Assembly: GCA_965655095.1 (NCBI GenBank)
Contig: OZ296655.1
Location: forward strand, 6,572,001-6,636,000
DNA: 64,000 nt
From: Haplodiscus bocki
Taxonomy: Eukaryota
Reading direction: 5' to 3'
Positions 204 through 24,557 of this stretch are shown here, piece after piece (position 1 is the first letter of the stretch; the number at the start of each line of letters is the position of its first letter). The notes under the pieces are model-generated. The model saw nothing but the letters and a program-made list of their open reading frames with translations. It was not told the origin of the DNA and did not search any database. Made by a program: the position numbers and the translations under genes.

Positions 204-735
204 TTTAGGGAGGTCTCGGAGAAAGAACTTGAAAAGTCGTGGTCCCACTTGGGAAAACAATTTTGCAAAAAAAAAACGAGAAACGCACAAAAAATTTTCG
301 TAAGTTTTTCAGTTTCACTGGACCACGACCTTTTACACTGCTGGTTCACGTTTTTCCAATAACGTTGATTTTTTAACAGTACAATAACGTTAATATGCCT
401 AACAGTAGATTTCTTGAAAGTTGGCCTTTGAAACGTTTGAGAAATTAACTTTATAAAATTCTTCGTTTTCGGCGCAAAAGTTAAGAAAACGGGTTATCAG
501 AATGAAACTGTCAAAATGACAGCTAATAATCAGTTTTTGTTCAGTTCTGGTACCCTACACTGAAACCAACTTAGAAAGTTCAAATGGTAGAAGAATTTTG
601 ACAGTTGGATTGCTAACTGTCAAAATAGTCAACAAAATTCAGTTGAGGTTGGTTTTGTATTTTGAACTCTTTGACTTAAGAAAATTTTCGGCTTGGGAGT
701 CAAAAATTGCATTTAACCCCCCTTTCCTTACTACT
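1..735 (-). mobile_element. End of a Polinton/Maverick (pPolB-proximal TIR and start of pPolB); the element continues left of the window
   Basis: ~590-735 closely resembles the TIR at 26330-26495 and ends ...ccttACTACT (5'-AGTAGTAAGG on the minus strand, a typical Polinton terminus). The adjacent minus-strand frame is homologous to the pPolB N-terminus of the 12211-26495 element. Confidence 0.85.
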
Positions 736-2050
736 AGTATTGGAAAATCGCATTTTTCAAAACCGGCCTACAATTTTCCTCCGCAGTGTGAAGTGTGAGC
801 CAATCGACTTCAAGTATAATGAGCCTTACGGGCAGCGATCATTTGAGCCTTTCCCGGGTTGTTAATTCATGCTAGTGTTCGTGTGAAATTAGTAAGTTAC
901 AGAGAACGAAAAACGAACGAGTTCCGTTGAAAGTCTCGAAAAAATTGATTGCTCGAGCTAACTCTGACTTTCTCATAACTCACAAGTTTTGCACTGGCAA
1001 AAACGCAGCATTAGCTAATTCTTTGAGCCAATGTGTACAAAACCAACAACTGTAACGAAGGGGCATTTTAGTAATGATTAGAGCACAAACTACTAAAAAT
1101 TCAATGAACTTTTCTACCAATGAAATTTTTCACAAAAAAACTACACTTCTACAGTGTTTGCACAAAATATGAGCGAATATGATTTCCCGAAAATGTTACC
1201 TTTGAGAAAAAAAAATAACTAAGTGCGCGCCCAAAAAACGTCGAGAAGAGCCAATTCGGCCCAGCACGTTCAAATCAATGGTATTCGGATTTTGCAGAAG
1301 ACGTCACAGGAGCGATGGTAAAAAGAAGCAATGGTATAGTGATGTGAGAATGCAGCTTGGACTGGAGCGGTTGCAGGTTCGATCCTCTTTCAACTTACAA
1401 CCGTTGGGCCTGGAGCAATGGTCATGTAACAAAAAACCTGCGGTATCAGGAAAATGAAATGTTTGTTTACTTAAGAGGACTTCAAACTGAAAAAAATTTT
1501 TAAATTATCTTTGAAAAAAAGTCTTACAATACTTAACTAAAAAGACTGACCAAGATTTTTCGCATTCCACTCACATTTCTCAACTTGTATTTCACAATAA
1601 ACTGGCATTTTTCGTGCTAAAAAATAGCAGCTCGCAATCAGAGATAACTTCGATCATTCAGCCAAAGCGTTCCAAGTTGGTTTTTTGTAAGTTTCCCGTA
1701 TTTCAAGTCTACAATTACTTTGACCTTGGGGGAAAACTGACATAATTGTACAGAAAACACTGCATTCGTCAATAAAACGAAAAGAAGTTTTCAAAAATTA
1801 CTAAGAGCAGTGTCACAAGGAAGGTAATCACCAAAATTTAGATCAATTATCAAGACAAAATGTGAAATCAATTGTTTCAAGTATAGTAGTATACAATTTA
1901 CCAAATCAATTTATAATTAACCAAATCTTAATTACTCATGAGCAGTAAACTCGAAAAACAAAGCAGTTAAATCAGGAAGCCAATTCAGCCAAAGTAACGG
2001 TCCTTTGGGAAGACTGACAGTGATGTTCTAAACCACATCCTCACATAACT

Positions 2051-2689
2051 TCAAACCAACCCCTTTTTCTTCAAATTGCGAAATTTATCCTTCAAGTCAA
2101 CCGCGTTTCTCTTCGGATGGAACACATTTTTGCCACATTGTAAAACATACTTCCAATTTCCGCAGCCATACATCTCGATTCCACGCTTCAACTGGTCAAT
2201 TTCGGTCACGGACCAAGGTACCTTGCGTCGTCTCTCGAGTTTGAGGACTGCTGATGCTTTGGAATATTTAGGAAGTAATCTTCTGGTGTTTTCATCCCGC
2301 TCTTGGGAAGTTAGACTCGAGGTTTTGCCGCTTCGCGATGTTTGTTTAAGCTCATACGCAACAGATGCACTTTTTCTCGAACAATCATTTTTATAGCTCA
2401 CTGAGAAATTATGCTCATGCTCATCAGCTGCTGGTTCCAAACTTTCGTTTTGCGATTCGCTTTCATCCAAAATTAGACATCTACGGAGTGGAGATGTTCT
2501 GGTAGCTCGCAAAGGCGTATGACTTGGAAGCTTGTCTCGGTCGGCTGTTTTTGGGGCCCCAACTGGTTTGATCAAATGGCGTTTTCGTTTTTCACTTCCG
2601 CTATTGACCATTTCATTTTCATGCATAACTTCTTCTGGGTCTGAAGGGCACTGGGTTTCTTTTTCTGCTGCCTCTTTCAAGGGTGATGC
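2051..2689 (-). CDS. Terminal exon of a TRF/TERB-like telomere repeat-binding protein with a C-terminal telobox Myb domain
   Basis: Ends RRKVPWSVTEIDQLKRGIEMYGCGNWKYVLQ...RNAVDLKDKFRNLKK, a single telobox-type Myb after a Ser/charged linker. Splice acceptor aattttttag|GCA TCA CCC TTG at 2690/2689 (phase 0). Upstream exons not identified. Confidence 0.8.
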   Translation of the reverse strand, partial: ASPLKEAAEKETQCPSDPEEVMHENEMVNSGSEKRKRHLIKPVGAPKTADRDKLPSHTPLRATRTSPLRRCLILDESESQNESLEPAADEHEHNFSVSYKNDCSRKSASVAYELKQTSRSGKTSSLTSQERDENTRRLLPKYSKASAVLKLERRRKVPWSVTEIDQLKRGIEMYGCGNWKYVLQCGKNVFHPKRNAVDLKDKFRNLKKKGLV

Positions 2690-3122
2690 CTAAAAAATTA
2701 TTTATGCAGTTTTGGTGCAACTTTGTAATGCCTGGCTATCATGTTTGACTGTGGAGATAAACTTGTTGAATTGTTTCAGATTGATTGAGTTGGATCACTG
2801 GTCATATATTACTGTTATCAATCAAAGTTGGCTGGAACAATGAGCAAAGTTGTTCCCACGCTAACTTTGAACATGAATAACTACTTTAACTTAAACCATT
2901 TAGTGAAAGGTCACAAAAAGTTTTATATTTTATGTAGACTAAACTTTGAAAACAAGGGTGTACAATTTCACATTGCAATTAAATTGGTCAGCAAAAATGT
3001 GGGAAACTTATTATTTTTCGCAGCATATGTAATATGCAAGAAAAATTATTCACTCAGTAGGGTCGTTTTTATTTTCTTATCAGTCCAAATTGCCAACTCT
3101 TTTTATTCAAAAATAAATGACT

Positions 3123-3300
3123 GACCGCAGTGGGGTTAGGACAACAAGGTTCTGCAGCGGTACGTCCGTGTGCGAATCCCTGCCGTGTCAGATATTTTAA
3201 TGATTTCACAGACATTTGTCAGAATATTCCAATTATTCCCATGGCACAGTGGGTAGGACAACAGTGTTCAGAAGCGGTAGGCACGGGTTCGAATCCCAGC
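3123..3300 (+). repeat. Two tandem tRNA-like (Pol III A/B box) motifs, SINE-like
   Basis: TGGCACAGTGG...GGTTCGAATCCC at ~3242-3297, and a diverged copy at 3123-3183 (CGCAGTGGGGTTAGGACAACA...TGCGAATCCC). No convincing cloverleaf. Confidence 0.5.
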
Positions 3301-3339
3301 TTTTACCTACACTTTTAAAATTTATTAATAAGACGGAAA

Positions 3340-3690
3340 CTCGTGATACCCCCCTATAATGCATAATACCTCAAATTTTCTGAAACATTGAAGGGTTCCC
3401 CACGAAGTTTTTCGGCACTGTGGGACAAAAAATTTTCGACAAAACCGTGAAGCCCCCCTCCTATGCATGAAATTTTCCGATACCAGAATTTTTTGAAACA
3501 GAACGGTTCCCCTACGAATTTTACCGGCAATGTGAGACAAAAAATTTCAAAGGAAAATAGTAATATCCCCGTCTTATGCATAAAACTTTTTGATACCCGA
3601 AATTTTCTGATACACCGAAGTATTCCCCAACGAATTTTTTCGGTACTGTGAGACAAAAAAATTTGAACGAGAAGTGACACTCCCTCTTTT
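3340..3690 (+). repeat. About 3 diverged tandem copies of a ~115-bp unit
   Basis: Recurring tatgcat..aaatttt..gaaaca..ggttcccc.acgaa.tttt.cggca.tgtgagacaaaaaattt. Confidence 0.75.
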
Positions 3691-6409
3691 GCAGATAATA
3701 TAGAAATCAGTGGTGGAATTGATGTTTCTAGAAAACCTTCGAAAACTATATTTTAAACAGTAGTCTCATTTTTAACTGTTTGCAAATGTTGATCAAAATA
3801 TTTAAATTCGGGAGAAAAAAATGCAGGTGCTAGCTGGCCGTTTTGTTATTGTAATTGGATGATTCATAACACAAATTCATTTCAATATTTGACAATTGGA
3901 AGAATCAATTACACAATTTACAGATCAAGTTAACATTCCAAACTTTTTTTGGCTTCAAACGTCGACCGTCCACCAGGCGTTTGAAAACCACTAGTCGTCT
4001 GTATAAAAATCCTTAACACCTTTCAAATCAGTGCTTACAACGCTACTAGAATGGGGCAGAAATACCAGTCAGTTGTCTGGGTGTCAAGATAAATCAAAAC
4101 GTACACGTTAACAAATTACAGTTTTCTACCCTAAGGAGTATGTGTACAAAGGCACGGAGTGTCCGAGCTCAGGCAAAAACTCCCTTGTGCAGAAAACTTC
4201 CAGATTTTAACACATTTTCCTACCAATGTGACTGGAGCGTCTGTTTGAAACGTTACTTAATGGTCCACGTTGTCACTCATTCCTTCTCTAAGCACTTCTA
4301 TAAAAAATCATCCCTTCAAAACATCGTCAGTTTTCAGTGATAAGCAGTTTATAATGAAGTGTAATACGTTCCAAACCATTGTTGAATGGTGAAATTTGGA
4401 TATTTCACTTTTTTCTCGAAAAAAAAATAGATGTATTTTTTTTCAAAATGAATGGATGGCTTTCAAGTTCTCTTTTTCAATCGCCAGTAAGTGGCGGGTT
4501 TTCCCACGCAATTTTCTTCCTAAGTTTTCAGTCCGATGACGACTTTTATCATGCCATAGCGCATTGATGACTTAAAAAGTCACCGCTGGGAAAAACAATC
4601 TTTCGTTTTCGATGTCTTGGTTCATAATTTTTCATTCAACTCCGAAAAAATGGTTGTCCTTAATTAGGATGAAGCTGTCGCGATTAAGCAACATCTGTCT
4701 CTGTTTTTGGAAAACTTTTTACATGCTTCAGCTTTTTTCTCGGTCAACTCATTTCTCCTAGTAGTTTGAATTTCAGAATAGCATTCTCAAAATCAGAATA
4801 TTTCACGAAAACTCTCCCTAACATTTGCATGCTTCAAATGATAAAAACCCACTACGGTGCCAATATGCATCCGCTATATCAATGAATTGACCATATACGT
4901 TTTCCGTCCTACAAATTATGCCAACTGGCGAGGTACGCAGCTGCCATGACTAACATACTGTCGCACAATATTTTTGACGATTTTCGAATAAAAACCAATT
5001 AGAGGGACTTTTGAAATTCAGTTATTGGCATTGAGTTTCGGAACAATAATAATTGGGCACCAAGCAATAATTGAAAGGCAATAATTGATTCGAGCAAACC
5101 CTTCTGCTAGATCAACAATTTAAATTTTCATTCTGTCCGAGACATTTTAAAGTTGATTCTATCAACGGTTCCGGAGTCATTGTTATCACGCTGAATGAAT
5201 AAAGCAGGCGAGTGAATGTAGCGGACGACTTGATGCACTCACTCGCTTTCTTCATTCGACATTATCATCATGACGTCATAGCAAACACACTGTCACGGGG
5301 TTTATTCTCGGTTTTCTACAGTACAGATTTTAAATTTAGTGAACTCTCGAGCAAAAACTAAGCATTTTTGGCGGCCAATTTTTCAAAGCGTATCAATTTT
5401 ACGAAAAAACCGCAAAAGCAAAAATTTCTTGGATTTTTTGTAAAATTTTATAAGTGTTTTTGTTTCGAAATTAGACCACTCGTTAAAAAGTCATGACCCT
5501 GATTTTGGCCAAATTTGAGATTTTTTCAAAAATTCTCATCACCTACAAAAGATACCGAAAAACTTCCAGAACCAATCCTCTAGCGTTGACTCTGCTCTCA
5601 AACATTTGGTTTTCACGATTTTTTGATTACATCTCCATTATATATCAATACAATCATTTATTGTACACCCTTGTTTTTGGGAACACTAATTCCAAGTGCA
5701 TTTTTTAAATAGTTTTTTGATATTTTTGAAAGAGCTAATTTTTTTATGTTTCCACTCTGTCAGCTGATTTAAATAACAAGTTTCACTCATACTTAAGACA
5801 CTCTGTAAAAAGAAGTACCTGAGTTCAATACGAATTGCTGAGATGGGTTAATTTCTATATTAAACTATACAATGCAATTCATTGACAGAATTTAATCATT
5901 TCATTGTTGATTATTGATTCTAGTGGCAATAGAAAAATAAATGGCACTCTTTGCTTTGCAAAGATTTATATACAAACGATGATCAAATGAAAGGCAACCA
6001 TTCACTTCAAGTCTTTGACCTCAAAAGATCTGTGAGTATTTGAAAACTTTCGAAAAAAAGTTTCAGACTAAATCATGAGTTTTCCGCGAAAAATTCAATT
6101 GCAAAAATTATATGGAAAACTTTTCGTTTCGTTAAGAAATTTGGGTGAATGATAGTCCTGACAATAAATGAACTAATGTCGAAGGTCTTGGCAACTTTAG
6201 GTTGCTTAAAACTACAGAGAAAAGTTCATTTGCGATTCTGAAAATTCCTGAGCCAAAGAGCCTCTAACATTTAAAGATTAGGACATGAAATGAGATAGCG
6301 ATTCCGCCAATATATATGCGCCATTGAAGCAGCAGAAACTAAATATTCGCAATTACTTTTTTGTACAATTTTGACATTTACATTATTCTGGAAATTTCTT
6401 TGACACTGC

Positions 6410-9400
6410 TTAGATTCGATCCTGCATAAGCTCTTCTCGGCTCAACACATCAACCAACTGCGCGTAATAGTCTTCGGATGGAACTCCTCGGGTGATCATA
6501 CTTCGGAGCATGCCAGATCGTTCTTCTTCCCTACTGGTCAAGGAGATGAACTTCAAGTAACTCGGAACCGAAGATGCTGACTTCTTGGCACACTGTAGAG
6601 TGTAAAAGAACAAATCGTCTCTTCCGTGGTACAAATCGCTGATTGATTTCAAAGAAACTGAAAGATCATCCAAGTCTTGAGCAGTTCCTCCGGCGGCAGC
6701 TAAAGATGCAAAACAAAGCGCAATTCTTTGCTGGAACGTAGCTGCTGATCCCGTAATACATGGCGTGCATTTAGCGTCGCTTTGCTCCTTTGCTTCGAGA
6801 GCTACAGTCCCTCTTCCTACCAACGGAATCACTCTATACTCGTTCAGAGGACTGTTGAAGGTTATCCGACCCAGATAATTGACCCCATCTTGTTCGAAAG
6901 GTACCAAGGACACCAAAAGGTCAAGCTTTGGAGGTGGTGGGTTGGCCAATCGACATGAGTAGTACTTCTCAGTAACAGTTTCTGGTCCTAACTTGGCACG
7001 ATTTCCACTGGGTTCTGCATACGGTCGGCCGTCTTCACGGAAAACTAAATTAAATGTTTTGGATCCTTTGTCCACACTGATTCCAAGCATGGATAACCCC
7101 TGAGATTGGTGATCTCGGAATGTAGTGACGACGTCATAAATTGAAAAACTGCGACCCAAAAAATTAGTAAACAAAGTTCCTACTCTAGGCTTCACTTTAA
7201 TTGTAGTTGGGTTCAGGTGATGTGAGATTGATTGAAGCAGTTGGTTATGCTTTTCCGACAGCAAAAATTCATTGTTTTTACTATCAGTACCAGAACCATT
7301 GGTAGGTACAACACTACTAGAAGTCTTTTTAGGTGTTGTATTACTCGTAGTAACGCAGTTTGGTGCCTTTTTCCTAGGTGTTTCCTGAGACGGTGACGCT
7401 TCTTCTCGACTCGCAACCGGAGCGCATGTATCTCCACTGTTTCCCGATTGCACAGGAACGGAAATAGTTTCCCGCAAATTGCCTCTTTCAACTTTTGATT
7501 CAAGATCTACCGATATGACTTCAGTATCCACGTTGAAATGCACATGTCGACTATCGTCGTCAGTAACATGAAACGCATCATTGGCCAGGGATGTGGAATT
7601 TTGTTCACGCGGCGAAACGTCGTCGCAATCGTCATCATCGGCATGTCTATGCAATTCATGTTCATGTAAGCCAGTATCAAGAGCATCCAAATCTTCTGCA
7701 TACGGTCGGCCGTCTTCACCAGAACCATTGGTACTAGAAGTCTCTTCAGTTGTTGTATTACTCGTAGTAACGCAGTTTGGTGCCTTTTTCCAAGGTGTTT
7801 TCTGAGACGGTGACGCTTCTTCTCGACTCGCAACCGGAGCGCATGTATCTCCACTTTTTCCCGATTGCACAGGAACGGAAATAGATCCCCGCAATTTGCC
7901 TCTTTCAACTTTTGATTCAAGATCTACCGATATGACTTCAGTATCTAAGTTGAAATGCACATGTCGACTATCGTCGTCAGTATCGTGAAACGCATCATTG
8001 GTCAGGGATGTGGAATTTTGTTCACGCGGCGAAACGTCGTCGCAATCGTCATCATCGGCATGGCTATGCAATTCATGTTCATGTAAGCCAGTATCAAGAG
8101 CATCCAAATCTTCTTGCTGTTCCTCGACTGTCAGTTTAGACTTTACTTTCGCCAACGTTGCTTCGCAGATTTCTTTTTTATCTCTCAAAGAAACCATCAA
8201 ACAATTCAACTCCGACTCTTCGCTAGTCTCTAGCATGTACTTATAATAACTCTTTCGGTTCTTCTCTGACGTGGAAATACAGTACATGATGTAATCTAAG
8301 GATGACTTCCTTCCGTGATAGCAACTATTAACATAGCACAAAGTGTAATATATTTGTTTTAAAGCACCTTCTTCTAAACCAAGAGCAAAACCTGCCCCCA
8401 AAATAGCAGCAGCTCTGTTTTGGAAAGTTGCACAAGCACCTCCTGTAGCTAACCCAGCGTGCGTGTCACCAGATTCTTGGCCTTCTAGGGCGACAGTCCC
8501 TCGACCAACCAGAGGAATTACTCTTCTCTCCCCTTGCAGGTTTTCCGCTAAAAGTTTACCCAAATAATTCACTCCTCCCTCTGAAAAGTGTTCTAACAAA
8601 GCTGACAACTTTAAGGATTTTGATGACTTCACAGGTAAAGGCAATTTGATAGAAATTTGGCAAGAAACGTCTGAAAATGTTTTTGATCGATCCGCGGACT
8701 GATCAAGATAGGGATTTCCGTTTTCTGCGAAAGATAATTGAAATACTCCATCTGGTACAACTATGTCTAACAACTGCAGTTGTTGATCAAGGTTTTCTGA
8801 TGATAAACTGTGCAACGTCTCCTCTATGGAAACCTCTTTTCCGGAAGTCAATTGGAAAGAGTTCCCGAATCTTGCTGTATAAGGGAAGAATGCAATCGGA
8901 AAATCACTCTCCATTACTCCATTGGCCCCTGGAGGCTGTTTGGGATTTGCACTTCTAGTTTCATGACGTTTCAGGCATTTTGCAAGTTCCTGGGCCGTCA
9001 AGACAACTTTCAGCGTTGAAAAATAGCCCTCATGTGGATATCCTTTTTTCACAAGATGCTTCAAATTATCACTCCACATTTTCTCCTCATAGATCGTAGA
9101 GAGAAACGCAGTGAAAGAAGGCATCTTATTCTGTGGATACTTCAAACATTCGTGATAGTATAAAATAATTTCCGGTTGTTTGTACAATTTGTAGTCAATA
9201 CTACAGAATAGTTCCTTAACTTGCCCAAGTTGGTAAGGTGATGCTCCGAAACATTTACAAACAGCCAATACAATGGCGCATTTGGTGAGGAAAGACGCTA
9301 TTTTCCCAGAAATTACAGGTAACGCGTGCTCCGATGACCCCGATAGTTGATCCAGGTTGATGGTTCCTCTGCCGACTAAGGGCATGAAGAATTGGTCTTG

Positions 9401-10666
9401 AACATTAAGACCACCAAAATAGTTGACACCATCCAAAATGGACGCTTTCTCCGTATATTCTAACTTCACAGGCAACTGGAGATCATGTGAAAAATTCAAT
9501 GTAAGCGAAGCTGAGTGCATTTCATCTGATTTCCCTCTAGCATTTTCTACTAAAGAGCAACCATTCTCATGAACAGTGATTCGCAATTGGTGACCCTCGA
9601 TTTCAATTCCCAAGTCAAGAAGCAAATCTGATTGGCTAATTTCACTAACATTACACAAATTTTGAAGCACTATGCTGAGAGGCGTTCTGCGCGCTCTGGG
9701 AGAAACGAGAGCATCACCGACTTCAGGTGTCACATGAAATTTGTCAGAGGGTAACGTCCATTTATTCGGCTTCGGCAAAATAGTCATCACTCGTTTAGCG
9801 AATAACATTTTGATGCCATCTTCGGGTGAAAAAAGCCGTTCTCGTTCTCGTTGATTGACTTGAAAACATCTCTGTCGGTCTTCTTCCAATTCAGACGGTG
9901 ACAGTTTTTGCAAGACTGCGTTGTAATAACATTGCGGCAAGCAGTTTTCATCATTGATGCTTGTTAAAACAGGTGACCATCTACTTCGAGGATATAATTG
10001 TTCCAAGAAATTGGCGTAAGAAATGCGATCTCGTAAAGGTGTTTGGCTGCAAAAAATGGCATACTTCAGACAATCACTTCTTCCGTGATAACGTTCATCG
10101 ATTTTCCAGAACTCTTGACCAATCTGATGCAAGGCAGCCATACCGGCCCCAGACGCTGCAGCCACTGCTAGAATGAAACAGCAGCGGTTCTGAAAGGAAG
10201 CACAAGCTCCTCCGGTAGCAAAACCAGCATGAGCATCGTTTTTTCTCCCTTCGAGAGCCACTGTGCCTCTTCCTGTCAAGGGAAGCATTCGTTTTTCCCC
10301 ATTCGGCGTTTTAACTGTTACATTGCCGAAAAAATTCACGCAATCTTCAAAAAACGGTTCGAAATCTACAGCAACAGACAATGGATAGAGCGGTTCCAGT
10401 GCTAGAGAGAAATTCAAAGTAAAGCTCTGTGTTGACTTTTGTGATTCCAATAAGTTGCGGTCGCCAAAAGGATCCAAATATGCGAATCCAGTTTCTTTGA
10501 ACGAAATGGATAGGTTTGTATCTGTTAATCGGACACCTAAATCTCGCAGTGCCAGGTGCTGTGAACTGGGATTGTTTAGCTTATGTCCGACAGCTTTAAT
10601 TTCAGTTGTTTCCCCGAGTACAGTTTCGAACGCGTTGGGCTCTCTTGGTAAAATCTGAATCTGCAT
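6410..10666 (-). CDS. Uncharacterised 1418-aa protein with four tandem copies of a ~250-aa domain and an acidic duplicated linker
   Basis: Uninterrupted 4.26 kb ORF. Motifs [G/C]VN[YF]xG, PL[VT]GRGT[VI]xL and F[QL]x[RK] occur four times, YHGR three times. A splice acceptor (ctattctttcag) lies 7 nt upstream of the ATG. Confidence 0.9.
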   Translation of the reverse strand: MQIQILPREPNAFETVLGETTEIKAVGHKLNNPSSQHLALRDLGVRLTDTNLSISFKETGFAYLDPFGDRNLLESQKSTQSFTLNFSLALEPLYPLSVAVDFEPFFEDCVNFFGNVTVKTPNGEKRMLPLTGRGTVALEGRKNDAHAGFATGGACASFQNRCCFILAVAAASGAGMAALHQIGQEFWKIDERYHGRSDCLKYAIFCSQTPLRDRISYANFLEQLYPRSRWSPVLTSINDENCLPQCYYNAVLQKLSPSELEEDRQRCFQVNQRERERLFSPEDGIKMLFAKRVMTILPKPNKWTLPSDKFHVTPEVGDALVSPRARRTPLSIVLQNLCNVSEISQSDLLLDLGIEIEGHQLRITVHENGCSLVENARGKSDEMHSASLTLNFSHDLQLPVKLEYTEKASILDGVNYFGGLNVQDQFFMPLVGRGTINLDQLSGSSEHALPVISGKIASFLTKCAIVLAVCKCFGASPYQLGQVKELFCSIDYKLYKQPEIILYYHECLKYPQNKMPSFTAFLSTIYEEKMWSDNLKHLVKKGYPHEGYFSTLKVVLTAQELAKCLKRHETRSANPKQPPGANGVMESDFPIAFFPYTARFGNSFQLTSGKEVSIEETLHSLSSENLDQQLQLLDIVVPDGVFQLSFAENGNPYLDQSADRSKTFSDVSCQISIKLPLPVKSSKSLKLSALLEHFSEGGVNYLGKLLAENLQGERRVIPLVGRGTVALEGQESGDTHAGLATGGACATFQNRAAAILGAGFALGLEEGALKQIYYTLCYVNSCYHGRKSSLDYIMYCISTSEKNRKSYYKYMLETSEESELNCLMVSLRDKKEICEATLAKVKSKLTVEEQQEDLDALDTGLHEHELHSHADDDDCDDVSPREQNSTSLTNDAFHDTDDDSRHVHFNLDTEVISVDLESKVERGKLRGSISVPVQSGKSGDTCAPVASREEASPSQKTPWKKAPNCVTTSNTTTEETSSTNGSGEDGRPYAEDLDALDTGLHEHELHRHADDDDCDDVSPREQNSTSLANDAFHVTDDDSRHVHFNVDTEVISVDLESKVERGNLRETISVPVQSGNSGDTCAPVASREEASPSQETPRKKAPNCVTTSNTTPKKTSSSVVPTNGSGTDSKNNEFLLSEKHNQLLQSISHHLNPTTIKVKPRVGTLFTNFLGRSFSIYDVVTTFRDHQSQGLSMLGISVDKGSKTFNLVFREDGRPYAEPSGNRAKLGPETVTEKYYSCRLANPPPPKLDLLVSLVPFEQDGVNYLGRITFNSPLNEYRVIPLVGRGTVALEAKEQSDAKCTPCITGSAATFQQRIALCFASLAAAGGTAQDLDDLSVSLKSISDLYHGRDDLFFYTLQCAKKSASSVPSYLKFISLTSREEERSGMLRSMITRGVPSEDYYAQLVDVLSREELMQDRI
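7289..8115 (-). repeat. In-frame internal tandem duplication (offset 417 bp) in the linker of the 1418-aa ORF
   Basis: DLDALDTGLHEHELH...KKAPNCVTTSNTT..NGSG occurs twice; gatctaccgatatgacttcagtatc at 7504 and 7921. Confidence 0.95.
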
Positions 10667-11149
10667 GCTGGCACTGAAAGAATAGATGTTTTACAATCTA
10701 AGACTTGCGCCTTTGGTGATTGACTTAGAAATGTAAAATTAGCTTTCGTTTTATGAATTACGAGTCTTCATTCCAAGAAGACTCGACAAAAACATAAAAC
10801 GTAGGATCGAAGATGCTAAGCACAAATGGAATAGAAAAGTTGAACAGATAATATCAAAACACCAAGAAAGCCTCATTATTTAAAAGAAATGTAGCTCCAG
10901 AAACACGGAACATAAACAAAAGCACAAATTTTTAGAACAGTGCTTTTGTAATAGACTCCGCAGAAAATTGCTCAGCAAATTTCTTAATTATGTGGGAGCA
11001 GATTTTCGTCGACGCTTAAGTAGAATTAAAAAAATGGCTATAGCAGTAAAAGTTTTTTTAAGATGGAATAGCCCATTTAGTATACGTTCTTGCTAACTCT
11101 AACTTAGCTGACCTCAATTTTCCTCTCATATATTCGCCTTTCATCGCTG

Positions 11150-12210
11150 AAAAAGATTACTTCGGTTATGTCGACCAATTTCAGCTTCTATTTCCTAAGC
11201 TCATCCTTCAGTTGGTTTTTAGGTAAGTATCGTTTTCTGCAAATCTAAAAAGAAGTTAATAATGTTTTGTTTCATACATCACAGACTACTTTTTTATTCA
11301 AAAAGCACACACTAGAGGGACCCTCCAAAAGCTCAAGTTGGCTTATGGAAGCAGGACCGTCAAACAAGTCATTAGAAAGGGAGTACATTAACAGAACATT
11401 ATTTCAGCAATTAGTTGACACAAGTAATAGCTTATCAATTCTCAATTTTCGAAAAGTACAAGGAGAAATAGTAGATTTTAATATATGGTTCCGCATTGGT
11501 AATTAAAAAAATGAGTAATCGAGCACTACGTGTACTAAGAACAATTCCTCTGACACCATATTGAAATTATCCTTCTCAAATTTCTTAGATTTTTCTACTT
11601 AGATACTCATTGTAACTTGATAAGGGATTTTTCTTTATTCAGCTTTGTTATTACTTGTTGGAAACTCGCTGAAAGTATCATGTAACTCAATGCTTCTCTT
11701 CATGAGGTTAATCTATATTATATCGAAGTGAACTCTTTTTTTTTCTACAACTCCTCAAAATTGTAGATGAGTCTAAATTGATTCGATACATTTGATCAAC
11801 GATTACTCAGCATCTTTGAAAAACACTGTAAATATATTTTTGTCTAATGTCGCCTGAAGACCTGCCAAGTCTGGTTTTGGGATTTGAAGATTTAGTAGTG
11901 ACTTCCCTCCCATTCATGTTTCTACGGAAAGTAAAATCTAAATAGGTACGAGAATGAACGGTTGAAGTCAGTTTGGTTACAACACTATCACTTGAGCGAA
12001 AAAAACCGTTGTGTATCAGAGGATCAATTCTGCTGGATAGGTTTTCAGTGACTCCCGCTGGCATCAGAAAATTTTGGGAGAGACCATTTTCATTTATGGT
12101 ATTCAAATTTCTACTAAGTGTAGAACATTCTGAATGGTCAGGGTTCATGCTACCCAGAACAAAAAAACTCTCCGAAAGTATTGAAAGTCTTGCAATATTG
12201 CTTGGATATC
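11150..12210 (-). mobile_element. Decayed LINE ORF2 (3' part of AP endonuclease plus RT remnants), interrupted by the Polinton
   Basis: VLGSMN...GLSQNFLMPAGVTENLSSRID...STVHSRT matches decayed GDFN / PTR / ID / SDH motifs. FLDLQKT at ~11240 matches RT FLDLSKAF. Confidence 0.65.
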
Positions 12211-12373
12211 AGTAAAGGAAGGAGGGGGGTTTGCTGCAATTTTTGACTCCCAAACCGAAAATTTTCTAAGTCAAAAAGGTCAAAGTAAAAAACCATTTGA
12301 AACTGAATTTTGTTGACTGAGCACAGAGTAAGTAAACCCACTGTCAAAAATCTTTCACAAGGCAAATTTTCTA
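12211..12373 (+). repeat. Polinton left TIR
   Basis: agtaaaggaaggagggggg...ggcaaattttcta is an inverted match to 26330-26495 (roughly 80-85% by eye). Confidence 0.9.
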
Positions 12374-12743
12374 CGTTGTTCTCACTGTTGGCAACCGAAA
12401 CTTAACAAAGCCAACAAAGTTGATTGTCGACTGTCTTTTTTGAAAATTTCAATCTGATAATTCCTTTTCTTAACTATTGTAACGAAAGCAAGAATCAGCT
12501 TCTCAAACTATTACTAATCAGCAAAACATCTAAAAAATGTTCTGTTTCACTTTTATTTAAATTCGATTTATCGGAAAACGGGAACCAGCAGAAAAAGTCG
12601 TGGTCCATTGCAAATGGAAAATGAAAAAAAATTAAAAACAAAAATTTCGAACGTTTCCGGCGTGTTTCGTGTGAAGCTGAAAATTGAACACTTCTGGACC
12701 ACGTCCTTTGCGAGTTACACATTTGTTTATTTGAACCTGCACA

Positions 12744-15700
12744 AGGTTTCCTTGTTGTGAATGTGGTAGATTATTGAGCTCAAAACGTGCTTCAAGTGAT
12801 CACAAGCGAAAGAAGCACAATTTTGAAGCGATTGATCTGATCAAAGTTTCCAAATGTGGTCATTGTGAGGATTCTTTCACAAAATATTGCAAATTTTTGC
12901 GCCATCTAAGGAACCATTACAAATCATCGGGCAACTATCGATGTTTCTCTTGTCCAACCTACTTTGGAAGCCTCTCAAATTTGACTCAACACCAAGAACA
13001 GTATCATAGCGATGTATCTCTTGGTAGACCGAAAATCAACGTCTCCGATTTGCTCGATTTCACAACTGAAGCCGTTAATTCTAAATTCCAACTTCATCAA
13101 TTCAAGCTTGAGGACTCTGATGGTCTGGAACCGTTCAACTACAATATTTCTCAGAAATATAGAATCACTGTATTTGTGAATTCTTTATTGAGCGTGACTC
13201 CAAACGTTAAACCCGGTCTAAGCACTACAGTGAAACTGAAAAAGCCTTTGGAGAGCAAGGTAGTAGAGGCTTTTTTCAGTTCGGCCATATCTCGAGTTTC
13301 TTCTCAGCTCACCGATGTCGAGTATTTGTAGCATGTGGATGCCTTGATGACACAATTGAATATCTTCGCCACAGGTGGTTCGGGATGGATGTTTGGAACA
13401 TTGACACTGTTGGAAATCAAAACAGTCTCCTGTAGTAAAATTACTGTTGGCTCATTTATAGAAACGCCACCAATTCTCGAACTACTGAATTGCTCGATTT
13501 TGAATGTTGTGAATAAACGTTATGACTTCTGCTTCTTGTATTGCGTTGCAGCTGCTCTATTCTCTTTCATCGGAAGAGCTAAAAGTCCAAAGAACCATAA
13601 GAAAAACATCGAGCGGCTATCTTTCAACTCAAAGCTAATGCCGATGCTTCTGTCCGCGATTCCTTCTTGTGAGAAACGGAATCGTTGCTCAATCAATGTT
13701 TATCAGATGGAGATCTCCAAGTTAGTGTCCGTGTATCACGGTAGCAATCGAAGAGAAAGACACAAAATTGATCTTCTCCGCCTAATGGATAACCTAAACA
13801 GTCATTATTGCCTGATTAAAAATTTCTCGAGTCCTATTCATTTCCTAACTAGGTCCAGAATGAAGCACGACAGGGGACCAAAATCGCGCTTTTGCCGAAA
13901 CTTCTTTCAACCGATAATTAAAAAGAAAGTCAAGAAACACGTTTCGTTTTACGAAAATAACGCACCACTTGAGATTCGAATGCCTCTTGAATCACCAAGA
14001 ACTGAGTTCGTCAATTGGGACAAAACGCAAAAGTGTTCCTTTGTTGTTTATGCTGACCTTGAAGCAGTCAAGGTGGCTTCAGCACAATTTCCTCAAACTA
14101 AACGTGGGACAAAAGAAATTGAAAAGCACTATGCACCAAGCTATGGAGCAGTCCTGGTTGATTCTAGGAGTTAGTTGAACTTTGCCTATATCTCAGTGAG
14201 GTTATGGAAAAAATCTAATCTTTACCACTTTTGTTGACCTTATTCAAGTTTTAACTCGGCTGCGCTCAAAGTGATTTTCGTTTCAGCGAGTGGAATTGTT
14301 AAACAAGGTTTCTACCGGGAATTGGACTGTAATGAAAAGTTGTTGGACATGTTGCGTGATTGGTTATTTTGGTGCTACGGTGAGAAACAGATGTTCAGAC
14401 GTTTAATCGTTTCAGAGCAGCAGCGGAAGCGAATGTTGAACGTGGCAACTGTTTCATGCTGCTGATGTGGCATGGATGTGGAAAAATCAGCTCGATTGAT
14501 TCATCACTGTCATCTTTCAGGAATAATTTTTGGCGTTGCCTAATCACAATGCAATCTGAGAGCCAGAATGACGACTTTCTTACCAGTCTTTTTCCAAAAT
14601 TTACCGAGATACGATGCTCACCATATTTCGAATTGAAACACTTGAAATTAAAGGTGGGTGAAAAATTGTCTTCAATTGCCAAAACGGATGAAACATACAT
14701 TTCATTCAGCATCAATATACCTGTGGGCACTTACAAAAAGCAATCGGGGCAAACGGTTGAATTGTATCAATTTCTTCGCTTCCTCGACAGCTATCAATTT
14801 GTTTCTCAAAGTCTAGAAAGTCTTGCAAAGGAACTGAAGAAAGATGACTTGTTCTTACTCAAGCAATTCTTTCACAATGTTCGGGACCAAATTTTTTTCA
14901 AGCTCACTCAGAAAGGTTTTTTCCTTACAGTTAACTCGACTGTTTTGAAAAGTTTAAAGAGCTTTTTCCAAATTATGGTGATGCTTGGAAAAATAGTCTC
15001 TCTGGTGAAATCGGTATTACTGATTCTGACTATCAACATGCAGTCAGTGTTTACGATGATTTTGGTTGGCAAAACCCGAGCGACTATCACGCCGTGTATC
15101 TAAATACTGATCTGCTTCTTTTGGCTGATATTTTTGAAAATCTTCTAAGTGTCTGCCTAAATGCTTACAGGCTGGATTCCTCTATTTTTATTCGGCTCCT
15201 AATTTGAGCTGGGAGTCTATGCTCATTTCCACAAAAGCGAAGTTGGCACTGTTGCAAGACATTGACATGCTGTTATTTTTTGAGTGTGGCGTTCGCGGTA
15301 GAAATAATGGAGTTGGAGAACTACGTCATTTCCCAGCAAACAACGCCCATCTCGACAATTTTGATCCGAGACAAAAAACAACGTTCGGCTCTTTTTACGA
15401 TGTAACTTCACTTTACGCCGCGACAAAGCAAAAAATCATGCCTTTAGATAAATACAATTGAACACAGAAATCACAATCGAACAAATTAAGAAAACTTCTG
15501 AAAATTCAAGCGTTGGGTACTTTGTAGGAGTTTATCCGAAGTATCCCCAATATCTACATGATCTGCACAATGGACTGCCTTTAGCACCTAAAAAGTTGAT
15601 CATACGGTCCTCATGGTTTTCACCTTTTGCCATGTTTTTTGGCATTCAACCCAACAAAACGCCGAAACCGGTCGAGACGCTATTGGACAAGGAAAATAAT

Positions 15701-16622
15701 GTCTGTCATTTCGAAAATTTGAATTTTTATGTAAAACATGGTTTGGTCGCCGATGAAATACATCGCGTGTGCGAGTTTGAGCAAAGCAAGTGGTTAGGTG
15801 TGTACTTAGAAAAAAACACTGTTATGCGCAAAAAAGCTAAGAATGACTTTCATAAGAACTTCTACAAGTTGATGAGCAACGCATGTTTCGGGAAAACCAT
15901 GGAAAACTTGAGAAAGCGATCGGTTAAAGGATTTGTTTCCAATCATCAGCAAGCAGAAACCTATGCTCAGAGAGCAATTTTCAAACCCTTTCAAATTTTT
16001 AGGCGAGATTTGGTTTCTGTATCTTTCAAAAAATCGTATGTGGTATGGACAAAGCCTACTCCTGTGGGAGCTGCCATTCTACATTTGTCCAAATTGTCTT
16101 TGTACAAGCTTCATTACGAGGAAATGATCCCTCGTTATTGGCCAAGTCATTTGAAAGTAGCCTATAAAGACACCGACTCTCTGTTCTACCTGATTGAAAC
16201 CCTTGATCTCTTCAAAGATATGGGGTCTTTCAAACAATTGCTTGATCTTTCAGGTTACCCGCAAGACCACTTTTTGCACGATCCAACAAGTAAGAAATTT
16301 CCGCTAACTATGACAGATGAATTACAAGGCAAAGTTTTACGCGAAGTTGTTTGCTTACGATCCAAACTCTATAGCATCGACTACGTTGGTGGGTTGAAGC
16401 AGAGCGCCAAGGGCGTACAAGAGTCAGTTGAAAAAACTCTATATCACGATTTGTTTAGACACTACCTCTTCTCAAAAGACACAGTTGCGTTCACACGGTC
16501 ATCAAATTGTAGTCAATGAGATTGATAATGCCGCAGTCAGCTCATTTGATGACAAACGCTTCCTTCTGGATAATGTTGTTTCTTCACTTGCCTATGGACA
16601 CTACATAATTGGAAGTACTTGA
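12744..16622 (+). pseudogene. polB: Protein-primed family B DNA polymerase with 3 N-terminal C2H2 fingers, an endonuclease VII-like insertion and one predicted intron; stops and frameshifts
   Basis: Exonuclease motifs YADLE and FLDSYQF; polymerase motifs YDVTSLY, KLMSNACFGKT, YKDTDS, RSKLYS, KGV; HHCHLSG...CNL at ~14500. The start codon appears mutated ATG>AGG at 12744 relative to the copy at 203. Confidence 0.92.
14170..14286 (+). other. Predicted GT-AG spliceosomal intron (117 bp, phase 1) in pPolB
   Basis: GAT TCT AGG A|gttagt...gattttcgtttcag|CG AGT GGA. Removal joins YGAVLVDSR-T-SGIVKQGFYRELDC in frame and removes stop codons. Confidence 0.75.
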
Positions 16623-17292
16623 GTGACACTACAGACCAACAAACAGGTCGCTGTTTCAAAATGTTTCCAATTCTTTGGTTTCTCCAACCAGAGTCTTTGG
16701 GAAACTCTTCACACTTTTTTTCTTCTGTTCAGGTTACTCAAATGGTTACGACTCTTCGTCATTCTATAGTGACTCGACCTTTTTCACCAGTAGTTCCTGC
16801 TCTTCCGCTACTGATCTGGACTCTGAGTCGTCGAATTACAGCCAGACAACGCAACTTCGTGGCTCTCTGCATGATGTGCTCAAAACATTACCTTCCTCTT
16901 GTAAGTTGTGGCAAAGCAAGAATTTTCTTTGCGTAAAGTCAAACTTCTACAGCAGTAACTATTGCATTGGTCTTTAATTACGTATGGTAAAGGTTCGCGT
17001 GGTTCTTTTCATCCGTTCGTTAAAATCAACGCTTTCTTTTTTAGCATGGTACACAGATCTTGGTTTCAACCAGCCTCCTATATCGGATCGCGAACTATCC
17101 GACTTTGTTGACTGGGATCAACTATCTTCAATGGCTGACGATAACGATGTTTATTCTGGTCCAGGCCCAATATGTCCCTTCAATGACAGGGAAGCCGAAG
17201 AGGAAGACCTAGTAGATTTGCCAGCTTTCAGAAAAAGCAGGAGGCGAGCCTTCTTGAGCGAAGGCAGTGACACAGATGAAAGTGTGGCCTAA
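16619..17292 (+). CDS. Predicted 3-exon acidic Ser-rich accessory protein (exons 16619-16646, 16733-16900, 17045-17292)
   Basis: Introns gtcgct...tcttctgttcag (16647-16732) and gtaagt...tttcttttttag (16901-17044), both phase 1, join three separate ORFs into one frame. The start is TTG, overlapping the pPolB stop (probably a mutated ATG). Confidence 0.65.
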
Positions 17293-17364
17293 ACACTAGT
17301 AAACTTTCAACGTCTTCGCATCACAGTCTTGCCTTAATTTTAAATTCAATACTAATCGACATTT

Positions 17365-17951
17365 TTACGAGGTTCTATATTTAAATTGACTATATTTAAC
17401 ATGTTCATTAAAAAAGCGTACTGTATCAATTTCAGTGGTTTGCATTAAAAAGGGATTTTTTTGCAGTTTGTAAACGTTGAAGGGTTTCCTGACCAGATAG
17501 TGTACTAGATACAAGCAGTACAAACCACACATGTTAGAATGAAGTTTTTGCAAGGGTTGGTTGATCGTTTGGAATCCTCCACATTTTCTGCTGTAGAAAT
17601 TGTAGTCTGCTGAAATTGTAGTCTGCTGTAGAATTGATCAAATTAGCATAGAGGCCTGCCGAGGCAATCCCAATCAAAAATTCCAACGTGATCACCATTG
17701 TCGCTTGCACACAGTAAAATCCAATGCTGACCGCTTTTATTTGACAGCGAGCAGTTTATTTTTTGAAATTTCCTCAGTTGTGAAACTTTCAAGCTTTACT
17801 CTTTTTTCTTTTTGTCGGGCCTGCTGGTTTTTTGTTTTTCCACGCAGTCTATCTTGCATTTAGGGAAATAGTCCGACCACCAAACGCCACCAAAAACGTG
17901 CAATGTACTGGAACACTTTGTTGCAATTTTTGCAATTGTGAAGTTATCCAT
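17365..17951 (-). pseudogene. Adenain-like cysteine maturation protease
   Basis: MDNFTI...FGGVWWSDYFP, GQHWILL, DWDCLG, QKLHSNMCGLYCLY (His/Asp/Gln/Cys). Frameshifted. Confidence 0.85.
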
Positions 17952-19953: not shown

Positions 19954-20111
19954 CTAATTTAACATACATACACACGATTCATTTATGATAATGATGATTA
20001 ACGGTTGGTACATTTGTTTGGTTCCGTGACTAATTGTCAAATGGCGTGGACAAGAGACAAGAAGAATATTCAACCTTCTTCGCTTGGTTATTTCTCGGTC
20101 AATTGTTCTTG

Positions 20112-21155: not shown

Positions 21156-21249
21156 GTCTTGAGGAGATGGAAGCCTCTCAATTTGACAGGTTGTTGATAT
21201 TACGCCGTTTGGTATTTTCAGGAACGTGCGCTCGTATTTTCTTGTCCAA

Positions 21250-22410: not shown

Positions 22411-22434
22411 TTGTCGAACAGTAGATTCAGAGAG

Positions 22435-23090: not shown

Positions 23091-23103
23091 AGCTCCTTTA
23101 AAG

Positions 23104-23400: not shown

Positions 23401-23417
23401 AAAATTTAATGTACAAG

Positions 23418-24409: not shown

Positions 24410-24557
24410 CTGTCATTCTTGATCTACACAAAATGCACTGTAATAACCACTAGAACGTGTCGATGTAACGTCTTGCATGGCAAACAAATTGTTCGCTGGA
24501 AGCCTTGCCTGTTCTGGAGAAACCCAAGCGTTTTCCACTTCGAATAAATTGAAATCG

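What the first reader, a model, noticed from the sequence alone, without database searches (positions are those of the whole stretch)
6410..10666. Intact 1418-aa protein made of four tandem copies of an unrecognised ~250-aa domain with enzyme-like motifs
Seen: the only long uninterrupted ORF in a window where every mobile element is broken. Four diverged repeats: D1 ~10640-9870, D2 ~9700-8975, D3 ~8860-8105, D4 ~7190-6413. Each has a beta-like half (LG[IV]..[LF]x[IL]xFxExGx[PA]Y..SGxR; GVN[YF]xG; R[VM][IL]PL[VT]GRGTVALE) and a helix-like half (A[ST]FQxR; YHGR; L[ST]x[ES]E). D1 and D3 share D[AT]HAG[FL]ATGGACA[ST]FQNR. Inference: conserved Gly/Arg/His/Thr residues across deeply diverged repeats suggest an active site or ligand-binding loop. 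Four domains in one intronless exon would fit a horizontally acquired or retroposed effector/defence-type domain amplified in tandem. I cannot match it to a known family from memory.
Basis: partly seen in the sequence, partly recalled or inferred. Interest (0 to 1): 0.8.

Follow-up and report, generated by a model that had tools for sequence, protein, structure and literature searches.

The report
Four-copy unknown domain, NACHT-linked in cyanobacteria
An acoel worm expresses a conserved 1418-residue protein made of four copies of an undescribed domain with no detectable known fold, whose closest relatives are small proteins encoded beside, and once fused to, NACHT immune-type ATPases in filamentous marine cyanobacteria.

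Summary
Window 6410-10666 (-) is an intact 1418-aa ORF with four diverged ~265-aa repeats (25-38% identity) and a recent 417-nt tandem duplication in the D3-D4 linker.

The gene is real. A transcript contig carries the published Symsagittifera roscoffensis spliced leader, joined 7 nt before the ATG. Four-domain orthologues exist in other acoels. Domain dN/dS is 0.14-0.22, against 1.3 for the linker.

A whole-library HMM search finds a rare family in three clades:
- acoels, Macrostomum and filamentous cyanobacteria;
- sponge, choanoflagellates, an amoebozoan and other protists;
- 750-aa proteins in bacterial MAGs.

In cyanobacteria the domain lies in a conserved cluster (kinase-AAA_35, AAA_35-HEAT, X, NACHT-repeat) and is once fused to NACHT.

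Conserved Asp/His, Cys at a helix start, and His-Gly-Arg survive in D1 and D3 but not in D2 and D4. The only invariant linker residues form an RVxF-type PP1-docking motif.

Best reading: a new effector-type, probably enzymatic, domain, possibly acquired from cyanobacteria. The biochemistry is untested.

The parts
6410..10666 (-). Complete coding sequence, 1418 aa, single coding exon
   Evidence: Orthologues at 97, 71, 68 and 47% identity.
9863..10666 (-). Domain D1 (aa 1-268). Keeps all family-wide residues: E58, N111, G132, T135, D144, H146, C155, H194, R196.
   Evidence: AF2 model pLDDT 97.2, pTM 0.94.
8963..9754 (-). Domain D2 (aa 305-568). The most diverged copy; lacks the Cys and the HGR motif.
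8093..8893 (-). Domain D3 (aa 592-858). Keeps all family-wide residues in every orthologue.
6413..7210 (-). Domain D4 (aa 1153-1418). Lacks the first His and the Cys, yet is the most conserved domain between species (pN 0.08 against the 71% orthologue).
   Evidence: AF2 model pLDDT 88, pTM 0.89.
7211..8092 (-). Acidic, Ser/Thr-rich D3-D4 linker (aa 859-1152). Poorly conserved; dN/dS about 1.3 against the 97% copy.
7280..8113 (-). Two tandem 417-nt units (8113-7697 and 7696-7280), 90% identical. Present only in this species; the chromosome-11 pseudogene has one unit.
7952..7966 (-). First copy of the linker motif R-H-V-H-F (aa 901-905), followed after 5 residues by a hydrophobic pair. RVxF/PhiPhi-like.
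7535..7549 (-). Second copy of the R-H-V-H-F motif (aa 1040-1044), in the duplicated unit
10190..10282 (-). D1 core motif: PLTGRGT...ND-AHAG...GGAC-ASFQ (aa 129-159). The Cys lies in the first turn of helix 153-171.
8420..8515 (-). D3 core motif, equivalent to the D1 motif (about aa 718-749)
10674..10686 (-). Polypyrimidine tract plus AG splice acceptor. The transcript contig joins the spliced leader here; the 5'UTR after the leader is 7 nt.
6128..6409 (-). 3' untranslated region covered by the transcript-like contigs of run X1

Best explanation
SHOWN. This is a real, single-copy, expressed host gene of an acoel worm. The spliced leader identifies the worm as Symsagittifera roscoffensis or a very close relative. 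The gene encodes four tandem copies of a ~265-aa domain, called X here. X belongs to a rare, undescribed family with a confidently predicted two-lobed fold: an N-terminal beta half and a C-terminal seven-helix bundle. No relative of this fold was detected among solved or predicted structures. All four copies are under purifying selection.

INFERRED, function. X is an effector-type module of STAND/NACHT conflict systems. In filamentous marine cyanobacteria a stand-alone X gene sits in a conserved same-strand cluster: FHA regulator, Ser/Thr kinase-AAA_35, AAA_35-HEAT, X, NACHT-WD40 or NACHT-HEAT. In one contig X is fused to the N-terminus of the NACHT protein, which is the classical effector position.

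The family-wide residues are a Glu and an Asn in the beta half, a G-x-x-T loop, D-x-H-A, a Cys in the first turn of the long buried helix, and H-G-R. I read these as a catalytic centre, most likely a thiol-dependent hydrolase or transferase (about 0.35-0.4). On this reading D1 and D3 are competent. D2 and D4 lost the His and/or the Cys but remain conserved, so they would act as non-catalytic binding or regulatory partners.

The disordered D3-D4 linker keeps only one short motif across all acoel orthologues: [RK][RH]V[HR]F, then 5-6 residues, then a hydrophobic pair. This fits the RVxF-PhiPhi docking motif of protein phosphatase 1. I therefore propose that the protein recruits PP1 (about 0.4). 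That echoes the kinase link seen in the cyanobacterial operon and in a protist X-kinase fusion.

INFERRED, origin. The acoel-type domains group with the cyanobacterial proteins and not with the sponge and choanoflagellate members. Transfer between marine filamentous cyanobacteria and interstitial worms is therefore likely (about 0.5 for cyanobacterium to animal). Fourfold tandem amplification would have followed, before the sampled acoels diverged.
For: Gene reality
- The ORF is intact.
- Run X1 totals only 82 Mb of contigs. It covers 6128-10675 at depth 84-275 and about 0 in the flanks. One contig carries 24 nt that are absent from the window, joined at a pyrimidine-tract/AG acceptor.
- Those 24 nt equal the published S. 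roscoffensis spliced leader (PMC9911081). They occur about 1590 times in the genome.
- Four-domain orthologues include Convolutriloba macropyga XP_075252651.1.
- dN/dS is 0.14-0.22 in the domains and 1.28 in the linker against the 97% copy. Against the 71% orthologue, pN is 0.08-0.18 with synonymous sites saturated.
- The only other copy in the genome is a broken pseudogene, 93-94% identical.

New family and fold
- No Pfam, NCBIfam, PADLOC or PDB sequence hit for acoel, cyanobacterial, protist or MAG members.
- Models have pLDDT 88 and 97.2.

Family and context
- 41 clusters among 1.84 billion representatives.
- Trees are; the acoel + cyanobacteria clade has 99/98 support.
- About 30 cyanobacterial clusters (Mastigocoleus, Moorena, Okeania, Rivularia, Nostocaceae) are all named 'hypothetical protein'.
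- The neighbourhood is conserved in about 10 loci, including an isolate genome.
- EAD1-TRADD-N-GUN4 and CHAT genes lie nearby. These are hallmarks of the systems described in PMC7159879 and PMC8195603.
- One contig carries an X-NACHT fusion with the Walker A motif 75 residues after X.
- One protist protein fuses X to a protein kinase.

Residue pattern. Linker motif.
Against: - No biochemical activity, metal content or binding partner has been measured.
- The Cys is replaced by Gly in D1 of one orthologue.
- D4, which lacks the His and the Cys, is the most conserved domain. The conserved role may therefore not be catalysis.
- RVxF-like strings are common by chance. PP1 binding was not tested, and I could not obtain a PP1 catalytic subunit from the genome.
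- The tree is a polytomy inside the acoel + cyanobacteria clade, so neither the direction of transfer nor the monophyly of the four acoel domains is resolved.
- The acoel gene has no NTPase partner, so the bacterial context may not carry over.
- Run X1 is not on record as RNA. Its RNA origin is inferred from the spliced leader and the coverage profile.
Confidence: 0.5

Rival explanations
1. X is not an enzyme. The conserved Asp/His, Cys and His residues hold a structural metal such as zinc. The domain is a binding or scaffolding module, and the four-copy acoel protein is a PP1-targeting scaffold. In cyanobacteria X would be the sensed or guarded partner of the HEAT-repeat NTPases rather than the effector.
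For: - The conserved set of His, Cys, His and Asp/Glu is a typical metal-ligand set.
- D4 lacks two of these residues yet is the most conserved copy.
- Both cyanobacterial neighbours carry HEAT repeats, which are protein-binding modules.
- X carries no adaptor domain such as an EAD.
Against: - A Cys in the first turn of a helix, together with an invariant Arg and a Gly-rich loop, is more typical of a catalytic site.
- The residues are lost together in some copies while the fold is retained. A purely structural metal site would be expected to be needed for folding.
- The fusion at the N-terminus of NACHT is the effector position.
Confidence: 0.25
2. X is a membrane-attacking effector. The long Ala/Gly-rich hydrophobic helix at the centre of the helical bundle is shielded in the soluble state and inserts into membranes on activation, as in colicin or Bcl-2-like bundles.
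For: - The central helix of each domain is the most hydrophobic 19-residue stretch of the protein (Kyte-Doolittle about 1.7-1.8).
- Some relatives carry C-terminal membrane anchors (P0011, P0032).
- Membrane-disrupting effectors are common partners of STAND NTPases (established knowledge; PMC7159879).
Against: - Pore formers rarely keep invariant His, Cys and Arg residues across kingdoms.
- There is no structural match to colicin, Bcl-2, gasdermin or HeLo-type folds.
- The helix is modelled as buried at pLDDT above 95.
Confidence: 0.1
3. Origin rival. The gene is an old eukaryotic gene inherited vertically and lost in most animals, and cyanobacteria acquired X from eukaryotes. No bacterial-to-animal transfer occurred.
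For: - The wider family is present in a sponge, choanoflagellates and an amoebozoan.
- The cyanobacterial sequences form one shallow clade with short branches.
- The acoel gene has host-like GC and is SL trans-spliced.
Against: - Acoel and Macrostomum domains group with cyanobacteria (99/98) and apart from the sponge/choanoflagellate clade.
- The cyanobacterial gene is embedded in a conserved multi-gene cluster across several genera, with native codon usage and a Shine-Dalgarno-like site.
Confidence: 0.3
4. The ORF is cargo or a relic of the flanking Polinton/Maverick elements, or of another mobile element or virus.
For: Polinton terminal repeats lie at 113-723 and 12223-12834 on either side of the gene. 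Weak pPolB and integrase hits occur at 15458-16519 and 21688-22410.
Against: - The orientation of the repeat arms puts the gene outside both elements.
- The orthologous loci in other acoels show no Polinton genes beside it.
- There is no viral fold or PADLOC match.
- Selection is purifying and the locus is single-copy.
Confidence: 0.02

Closest known systems
N-terminal effector domains of bacterial NLR-like (NACHT/STAND) conflict systems (Kaur, Burroughs, Iyer and Aravind; PMC7159879, PMC8195603)
   Same: - The cyanobacterial members of the family lie in conserved clusters with NACHT-WD40/HEAT and AAA_35-HEAT NTPases and a Ser/Thr kinase.
- The clusters lie near EAD1-TRADD-N-GUN4 and CHAT genes.
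- One member is fused N-terminally to NACHT.
- Like TIR, Death-like and TRADD-N domains, the family is shared with animals.
   Different: - The domain matches none of the effector or adaptor families present in Pfam or PADLOC.
- The acoel protein has no NTPase, no EAD and no Death-like adaptor.
- It is a fourfold tandem array.
Thiol enzymes with a nucleophilic Cys at a helix N-terminus (papain-like peptidases, transglutaminases, NlpC/P60)
   Same: X has a conserved Cys in the first turn of a long helix, with conserved His and Asp/Asn/Glu residues elsewhere. The His and Cys are lost together in copies that look inactive.
   Different: - The order of elements differs, with the beta half before the helix.
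- The first His lies only 9 residues before the Cys.
- No activity is known.
PP1-interacting proteins with the RVxF-PhiPhi docking string (e.g. spinophilin, PNUTS)
   Same: X proteins carry a basic-basic-V-x-F motif in a disordered acidic linker, followed after 5-6 residues by two hydrophobic residues. These are the only invariant linker positions across acoel orthologues.
   Different: Only the sequence pattern was tested. There is no further similarity to any known PP1 regulator.
Enzyme/pseudoenzyme tandem arrays (e.g. kinase-pseudokinase pairs)
   Same: Copies that keep the conserved residues (D1, D3) alternate with copies that have lost them (D2, D4), and all are under purifying selection.
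   Different: It is not known that any copy is an enzyme. Interaction between D1 and D2 gave no verdict.

Membership tests
Any Pfam-A, NCBIfam or PADLOC family | Profile HMM match above the curated threshold | tested here: not met
   There were no hits for the whole protein, for each of 15 domains, or for the cyanobacterial, protist and MAG relatives. The best chance-level hit was Tub, E 0.28.
Any solved fold (PDB) | Significant sequence or structure similarity to a solved chain | tested here: not met
   - phmmer/hmmsearch against PDB: E >= 0.02, short stretches only.
- Foldseek: E >= 0.06.
AFDB and HHpred were not available.
STAND/NACHT-associated effector domains of prokaryotic conflict systems | Conserved gene neighbourhood or fusion with a STAND NTPase in prokaryotes | tested here: met
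   This applies to the cyanobacterial homologues, which are 41-42% identical to D1. The order [AAA_35/KAP-HEAT]-X-[NACHT-HEAT/WD40] is conserved in L022, L043-L053. L048 carries an X-NACHT fusion.
STAND/NACHT-associated effector domains of prokaryotic conflict systems | The window gene itself is linked to an NTPase or adaptor (EAD, Death-like, TRADD-N) | tested here: not met
   No such domain occurs in the 1418-aa protein or in the flanks of the orthologous loci.
STAND/NACHT-associated effector domains of prokaryotic conflict systems | Effector activity (toxicity, or defence on activation) | not testable with these tools
   This needs expression and infection assays.
Papain-like / transglutaminase-like thiol enzymes | Shared fold with a catalytic Cys at a helix N-terminus and a His on a following beta strand | tested here: not met
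   The Cys lies at the helix start, but there is no fold match and the His positions differ.
PP1-interacting proteins (RVxF class) | [RK]-x(0,1)-[VI]-x-[FW] motif in a disordered region, conserved in orthologues | tested here: met
   There is one motif per linker unit in all eight orthologous sequences examined, and these are the only invariant linker residues.
PP1-interacting proteins (RVxF class) | Physical binding to the PP1 catalytic subunit | not tested
   No PP1c sequence was recovered from the genome searches; only PP2A, PP4, PP2B, PP5 and a divergent PP1-like exon were found.
Polinton/Maverick cargo gene | Location between the element's terminal inverted repeats | tested here: not met
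   The arm at 113-723 points leftwards and the arm at 12223-12834 points rightwards, so 724-12222 lies outside both elements.

The most novel reading that the evidence does not exclude
X is a previously unrecognised class of immune or cell-death effector enzyme with a new fold. It is deployed by NLR-like NACHT systems in multicellular cyanobacteria. Animals and protists acquired it independently, and acoels domesticated it as a fourfold active/inactive array under PP1 control. This would add a new entry to the short list of immune modules shared by bacteria and animals (TIR, gasdermin, cGAS-STING, NACHT, Death-like, TRADD-N).
Probability: 0.2. Interest if true: 0.85.

Novelty: categorically new. 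Interest (0 to 1): 0.62.

Why it matters
If X is an effector of NACHT systems, it is a new biochemical output of bacterial NLR-like immunity. It would also be a new case of an immune-type module shared between bacteria and animals, found in a lineage (acoels) that is important for early bilaterian evolution and for photosymbiosis.

The family is small and sharply defined. It has a very confident predicted structure and a handful of invariant residues, so direct experiments are straightforward: mutagenesis, toxicity and defence assays, metal analysis and PP1 pull-down.

Even if the function turns out to be mundane, the work defines a new domain family with a fold that current libraries do not contain.

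Tried and rejected
- ESM Atlas feature search with D4 and with a choanoflagellate member gave no usable hit.
- Atlas and BFVD structure searches gave only TM <= 0.31 and E >= 0.15.
With the narrower alignment it found nothing in GTDB genomes.
- Complex prediction of D1 with D2 gave no verdict (score 0.00). It is neither evidence for nor against binding.
- The attempt to get a PP1 catalytic subunit from the genome for a docking test yielded only PP4, PP2A, calcineurin, PP5 and one divergent PP1-like exon. I abandoned it.
- The 750-aa MAG proteins have no conserved neighbours beyond close relatives.
- The AU test of acoel-domain monophyly did not finish in time.
- The Polinton-cargo reading was rejected on repeat orientation.
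- Pseudogene or chance ORF was rejected on expression, orthologues and dN/dS.


Full report
**1. The observation**

The window holds one long ORF on the minus strand, 6410-10666, running from ATG to stop and encoding 1418 aa. The next longest ORF in the 64 kb is 353 aa.

I cut the protein into overlapping pieces and compared each piece with the rest. This gives four repeats: D1 aa 1-268, D2 305-568, D3 592-858 and D4 1153-1418. Pairwise identity is 25-38% and E-values range from 1e-11 to 1e-34.

A separate feature lies in the D3-D4 linker: a recent head-to-tail duplication of 139 aa. At the DNA level it is two units of 417 nt, 90% identical, at window 8113-7697 and 7696-7280.

**2. It is a real, expressed, constrained gene of an acoel worm**

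The word-based protein search found only four proteins of similar length, at 97, 71, 68 and 47% identity. All have the same four domains and a variable linker. A member of a further cluster is RefSeq XP_075252651.1, 'uncharacterized protein' of the acoel Convolutriloba macropyga.

*Transcript evidence.* Four public runs hold the stretch.
- Three of them have 1.5-1.8 Gb of contigs and cover gene and flanks alike.
- The fourth, X1, has only 82 Mb of contigs. It covers 6128-10675 at depth 84-275 and essentially nothing outside that range.
- Its 5'-most contig continues beyond 10675 with 24 nt that are absent from the window. They are joined at a pyrimidine tract plus AG, 7 nt before the ATG.
- Those 24 nt occur about 1590 times in the genome.
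- They are identical to the core of the spliced leader published for Symsagittifera roscoffensis, where 30% of genes are trans-spliced (PMC9911081).

So the mRNA is SL trans-spliced, and the organism is S. roscoffensis or a very close relative. The 'intronless' coding exon is preceded by a trans-splice site. The expressed allele differs at 32 positions (17 synonymous) and keeps the frame.

*Selection*.
- Against the 97% copy, dN/dS is 0.14-0.22 in D2-D4 and 1.28 in the linker. D1 is identical between the two copies.
- Against the 71% orthologue, synonymous sites are saturated (pS 0.65-0.80). Non-synonymous divergence is only 0.08-0.18 in the domains, and lowest in D4.

*Copy number.* The genome holds one other copy, on contig 11. 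It is 93-94% identical, split into three pieces tens of kilobases apart, carries stop codons and has a single linker unit. It is a pseudogene.

*Mobile elements.* The gene is flanked by Polinton terminal repeats. The orientation of the arms places the gene outside both elements. Weak pPolB and integrase hits confirm the element at 12.2-26.5 kb.

**3. No known family, no known fold**

Pfam, NCBIfam, PADLOC and PDB sequence searches were run with the whole protein, with each domain, with a domain profile and with distant relatives. None gave anything above chance.

AlphaFold2 models were built for two domains.

| Domain | Alignment | pLDDT | pTM |
|---|---|---|---|
| D4 | 15 rows | 88 | 0.89 |
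| D1 | 38 rows | 97.2 | 0.94 |

Both models agree on the architecture. Two short helices and an eight-strand beta half occupy residues about 8-130. A Gly-rich loop follows, and then a bundle of seven helices whose first helix (153-171) is long and hydrophobic.

Structure searches found no relative.
- Foldseek against PDB gave no match better than E 0.06.
- The ESM Atlas gave TM <= 0.31.
- BFVD gave E >= 0.15.

AFDB and HHpred were not available. The claim is therefore 'no detectable relative with these tools', not proof of a new fold.

**4. The wider family**

An HMM of the 15 domains was searched against 1.84 billion cluster representatives. It found 41 proteins at E <= 0.001. Trees give three groups.

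*Group A (support 99/98)*
- the acoel domains, with each of D1-D4 forming its own orthologous trio;
- Macrostomum lignano;
- a few unassigned contigs;
- a set of 267-288-aa proteins from filamentous marine cyanobacteria: Mastigocoleus testarum, Moorena, Okeania, Rivularia and Nostocaceae. There are about 30 clusters, all annotated 'hypothetical protein'. They are 41-42% identical to D1.

*Group C*
- the sponge Sycon ciliatum;
- the choanoflagellates Salpingoeca urceolata and Microstomoeca roanoka;
- the amoebozoan Pellita;
- further marine protist transcripts.

Some Group C members are fused to PH, ankyrin or protein-kinase domains, and some carry a C-terminal membrane anchor.

*Group B*
- 740-790-aa proteins with X at the C-terminus, from bacterial MAGs of uncertain placement. 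They have no conserved neighbours.

**5. Context in cyanobacteria**

The order of genes on one strand is conserved in about ten loci, including two assemblies of the isolate Mastigocoleus testarum and a 3.99-Mb chromosome:

[FHA-response regulator] - [Ser/Thr kinase-AAA_35] - [AAA_35 or KAP NTPase-HEAT] - X - [NACHT-WD40 or NACHT-HEAT]

Other points from these loci:
- Nearby genes include an EAD1-TRADD-N-GUN4 protein and a CHAT protease. These are signature components of the NTP-dependent conflict systems of multicellular prokaryotes (PMC7159879, PMC8195603).
- In contig L048 the X reading frame runs straight into the NACHT protein, with the Walker A motif 75 residues after X. This places X in the N-terminal effector position of an NLR-like protein.
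- The cyanobacterial gene has the GC3 of its neighbours and a Shine-Dalgarno-like site, so it is native.

**6. Residues**

The following positions (D1 numbering) are kept across all three groups.

| Position | Conservation |
|---|---|
| E58 | 28 of 33 |
| N111 | 31 of 38 |
| G132 | 38 of 38 |
| T135 | conserved (T in 30, S in 5 of 38) |
| D144 | 31 of 38 |
| H146 | 31 of 38 |
| C155 | 28 of 38; lies in the first turn of the long helix |
| H194 | 32 of 38 |
| R196 | 32 of 38 |

All cyanobacterial members keep the full set.

In the acoel protein the pattern differs between copies.
- D1 and D3 keep everything. One orthologue has Gly for the Cys in D1.
- D4 has lost H146 and C155.
- D2 has lost C155 and the HGR motif.

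Loss of the His and loss of the Cys tend to go together, also in protist two-domain proteins. This is the pattern of a catalytic or metal site that is dispensable in some copies.

I could not measure distances between these residues because model coordinates are not exposed.

**7. The linker**

The D3-D4 linker is acidic, rich in Ser/Thr/Pro and poor in hydrophobic residues. It cannot be aligned between species except for one block.

The only invariant linker residues are the V and F of [RK][RH]V[HR]F, a V five to six residues later, and an Asp. The motif occurs once per orthologue. It occurs twice here because of the duplication.

From established knowledge of PP1 regulators, this fits the RVxF-PhiPhi docking string. 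Binding is untested.

The link to phospho-signalling recurs elsewhere: a kinase and an FHA protein in the cyanobacterial cluster, and an X-kinase fusion in a protist.

**8. Reading**

*Shown.* This is a real, expressed, constrained, single-copy acoel gene built from four copies of an undescribed domain, and the cyanobacterial relatives of that domain are tied to NACHT/STAND systems.

*Inferred, with rough probabilities.*
- X is an effector-type module: about 0.5.
- X is probably enzymatic with a Cys/His centre: about 0.35-0.4.
- D1 and D3 are competent, and D2 and D4 are non-catalytic partners.
- The linker docks PP1: about 0.4.
- The acoel-type gene came from cyanobacteria: about 0.5.

*Rivals.*
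- a non-catalytic metal-binding scaffold (0.25);
- a membrane-inserting effector (0.1);
- vertical inheritance with transfer into cyanobacteria (0.3, on origin only);
- mobile-element cargo (0.02).

**9. Verdict**

The domain belongs to no described family, so I rate it categorically new at the level of the protein family. Its bacterial setting is a known kind of system.

Interest is moderate to high. The link between an animal gene and bacterial NLR-type systems is topical and directly testable, but the biochemistry is entirely unproven.

Noticed in passing
G000 genome-wide; examples L014-L019: The 24-nt spliced-leader core occurs about 1590 times in the genome. In most sampled copies it is followed by AG and then unrelated sequence, which looks like retroposed copies of trans-spliced mRNAs. 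Only some copies (for example L016) continue with a stem complementary to the leader, as expected of a true SL RNA gene.
   Followed up: partly
window 12223-26462 and 113-723: A Polinton/Maverick lies at 12.2-26.5 kb. It has terminal inverted repeats (12241-12373 / 26330-26462, 84% complementary), a weak pPolB hit at 15458-16519 and a weak integrase hit at 21688-22410. The right end of a second copy lies at 113-723 and points out of the window.
   Followed up: partly
window about 31600-48000: There is a tandem duplication of about 8.5 kb. ORFs at 31643, 33363 and 37534 recur at 40167, 41887 and 46060, each offset by 8524-8526 nt.
   Followed up: no
G000 C11:44850581-44925563 (L007-L012): A pseudogene copy of the four-domain gene, 93-94% identical. 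It is split into three pieces by insertions of about 4 kb and about 67 kb, carries stop codons, and has only one linker unit.
   Followed up: yes
L050 (Mastigocoleus testarum), L052, L045: A conserved cyanobacterial five-gene cluster: FHA-response regulator, Ser/Thr kinase-AAA_35, AAA_35-HEAT, X, NACHT-WD40. It looks like an undescribed NLR-like conflict system with two STAND-type NTPases.
   Followed up: partly
L048:2847-3955: A natural fusion of domain X to the N-terminus of the NACHT NTPase. The contig ends inside the gene.
   Followed up: partly
L020, L023-L027: 740-790-aa bacterial proteins with a large unannotated N-terminal region and domain X at the C-terminus. They come from MAGs labelled Saccharibacteria, Rickettsiales, Planctomycetota or 'uncultured'. 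They have housekeeping neighbours and no operon partner.
   Followed up: partly
window 2051-2680 (-): An ORF of 209 aa with a Myb-like DNA-binding domain (E 2.8e-6). A Myb-like gene is also called downstream of the gene in the 97% copy (L013).
   Followed up: no
G000 C3:32440671-32441252 (L028): An apparently intronless PP2A/PP4-type phosphatase gene. The ORF is 341 aa and ends in DYFL.
   Followed up: no
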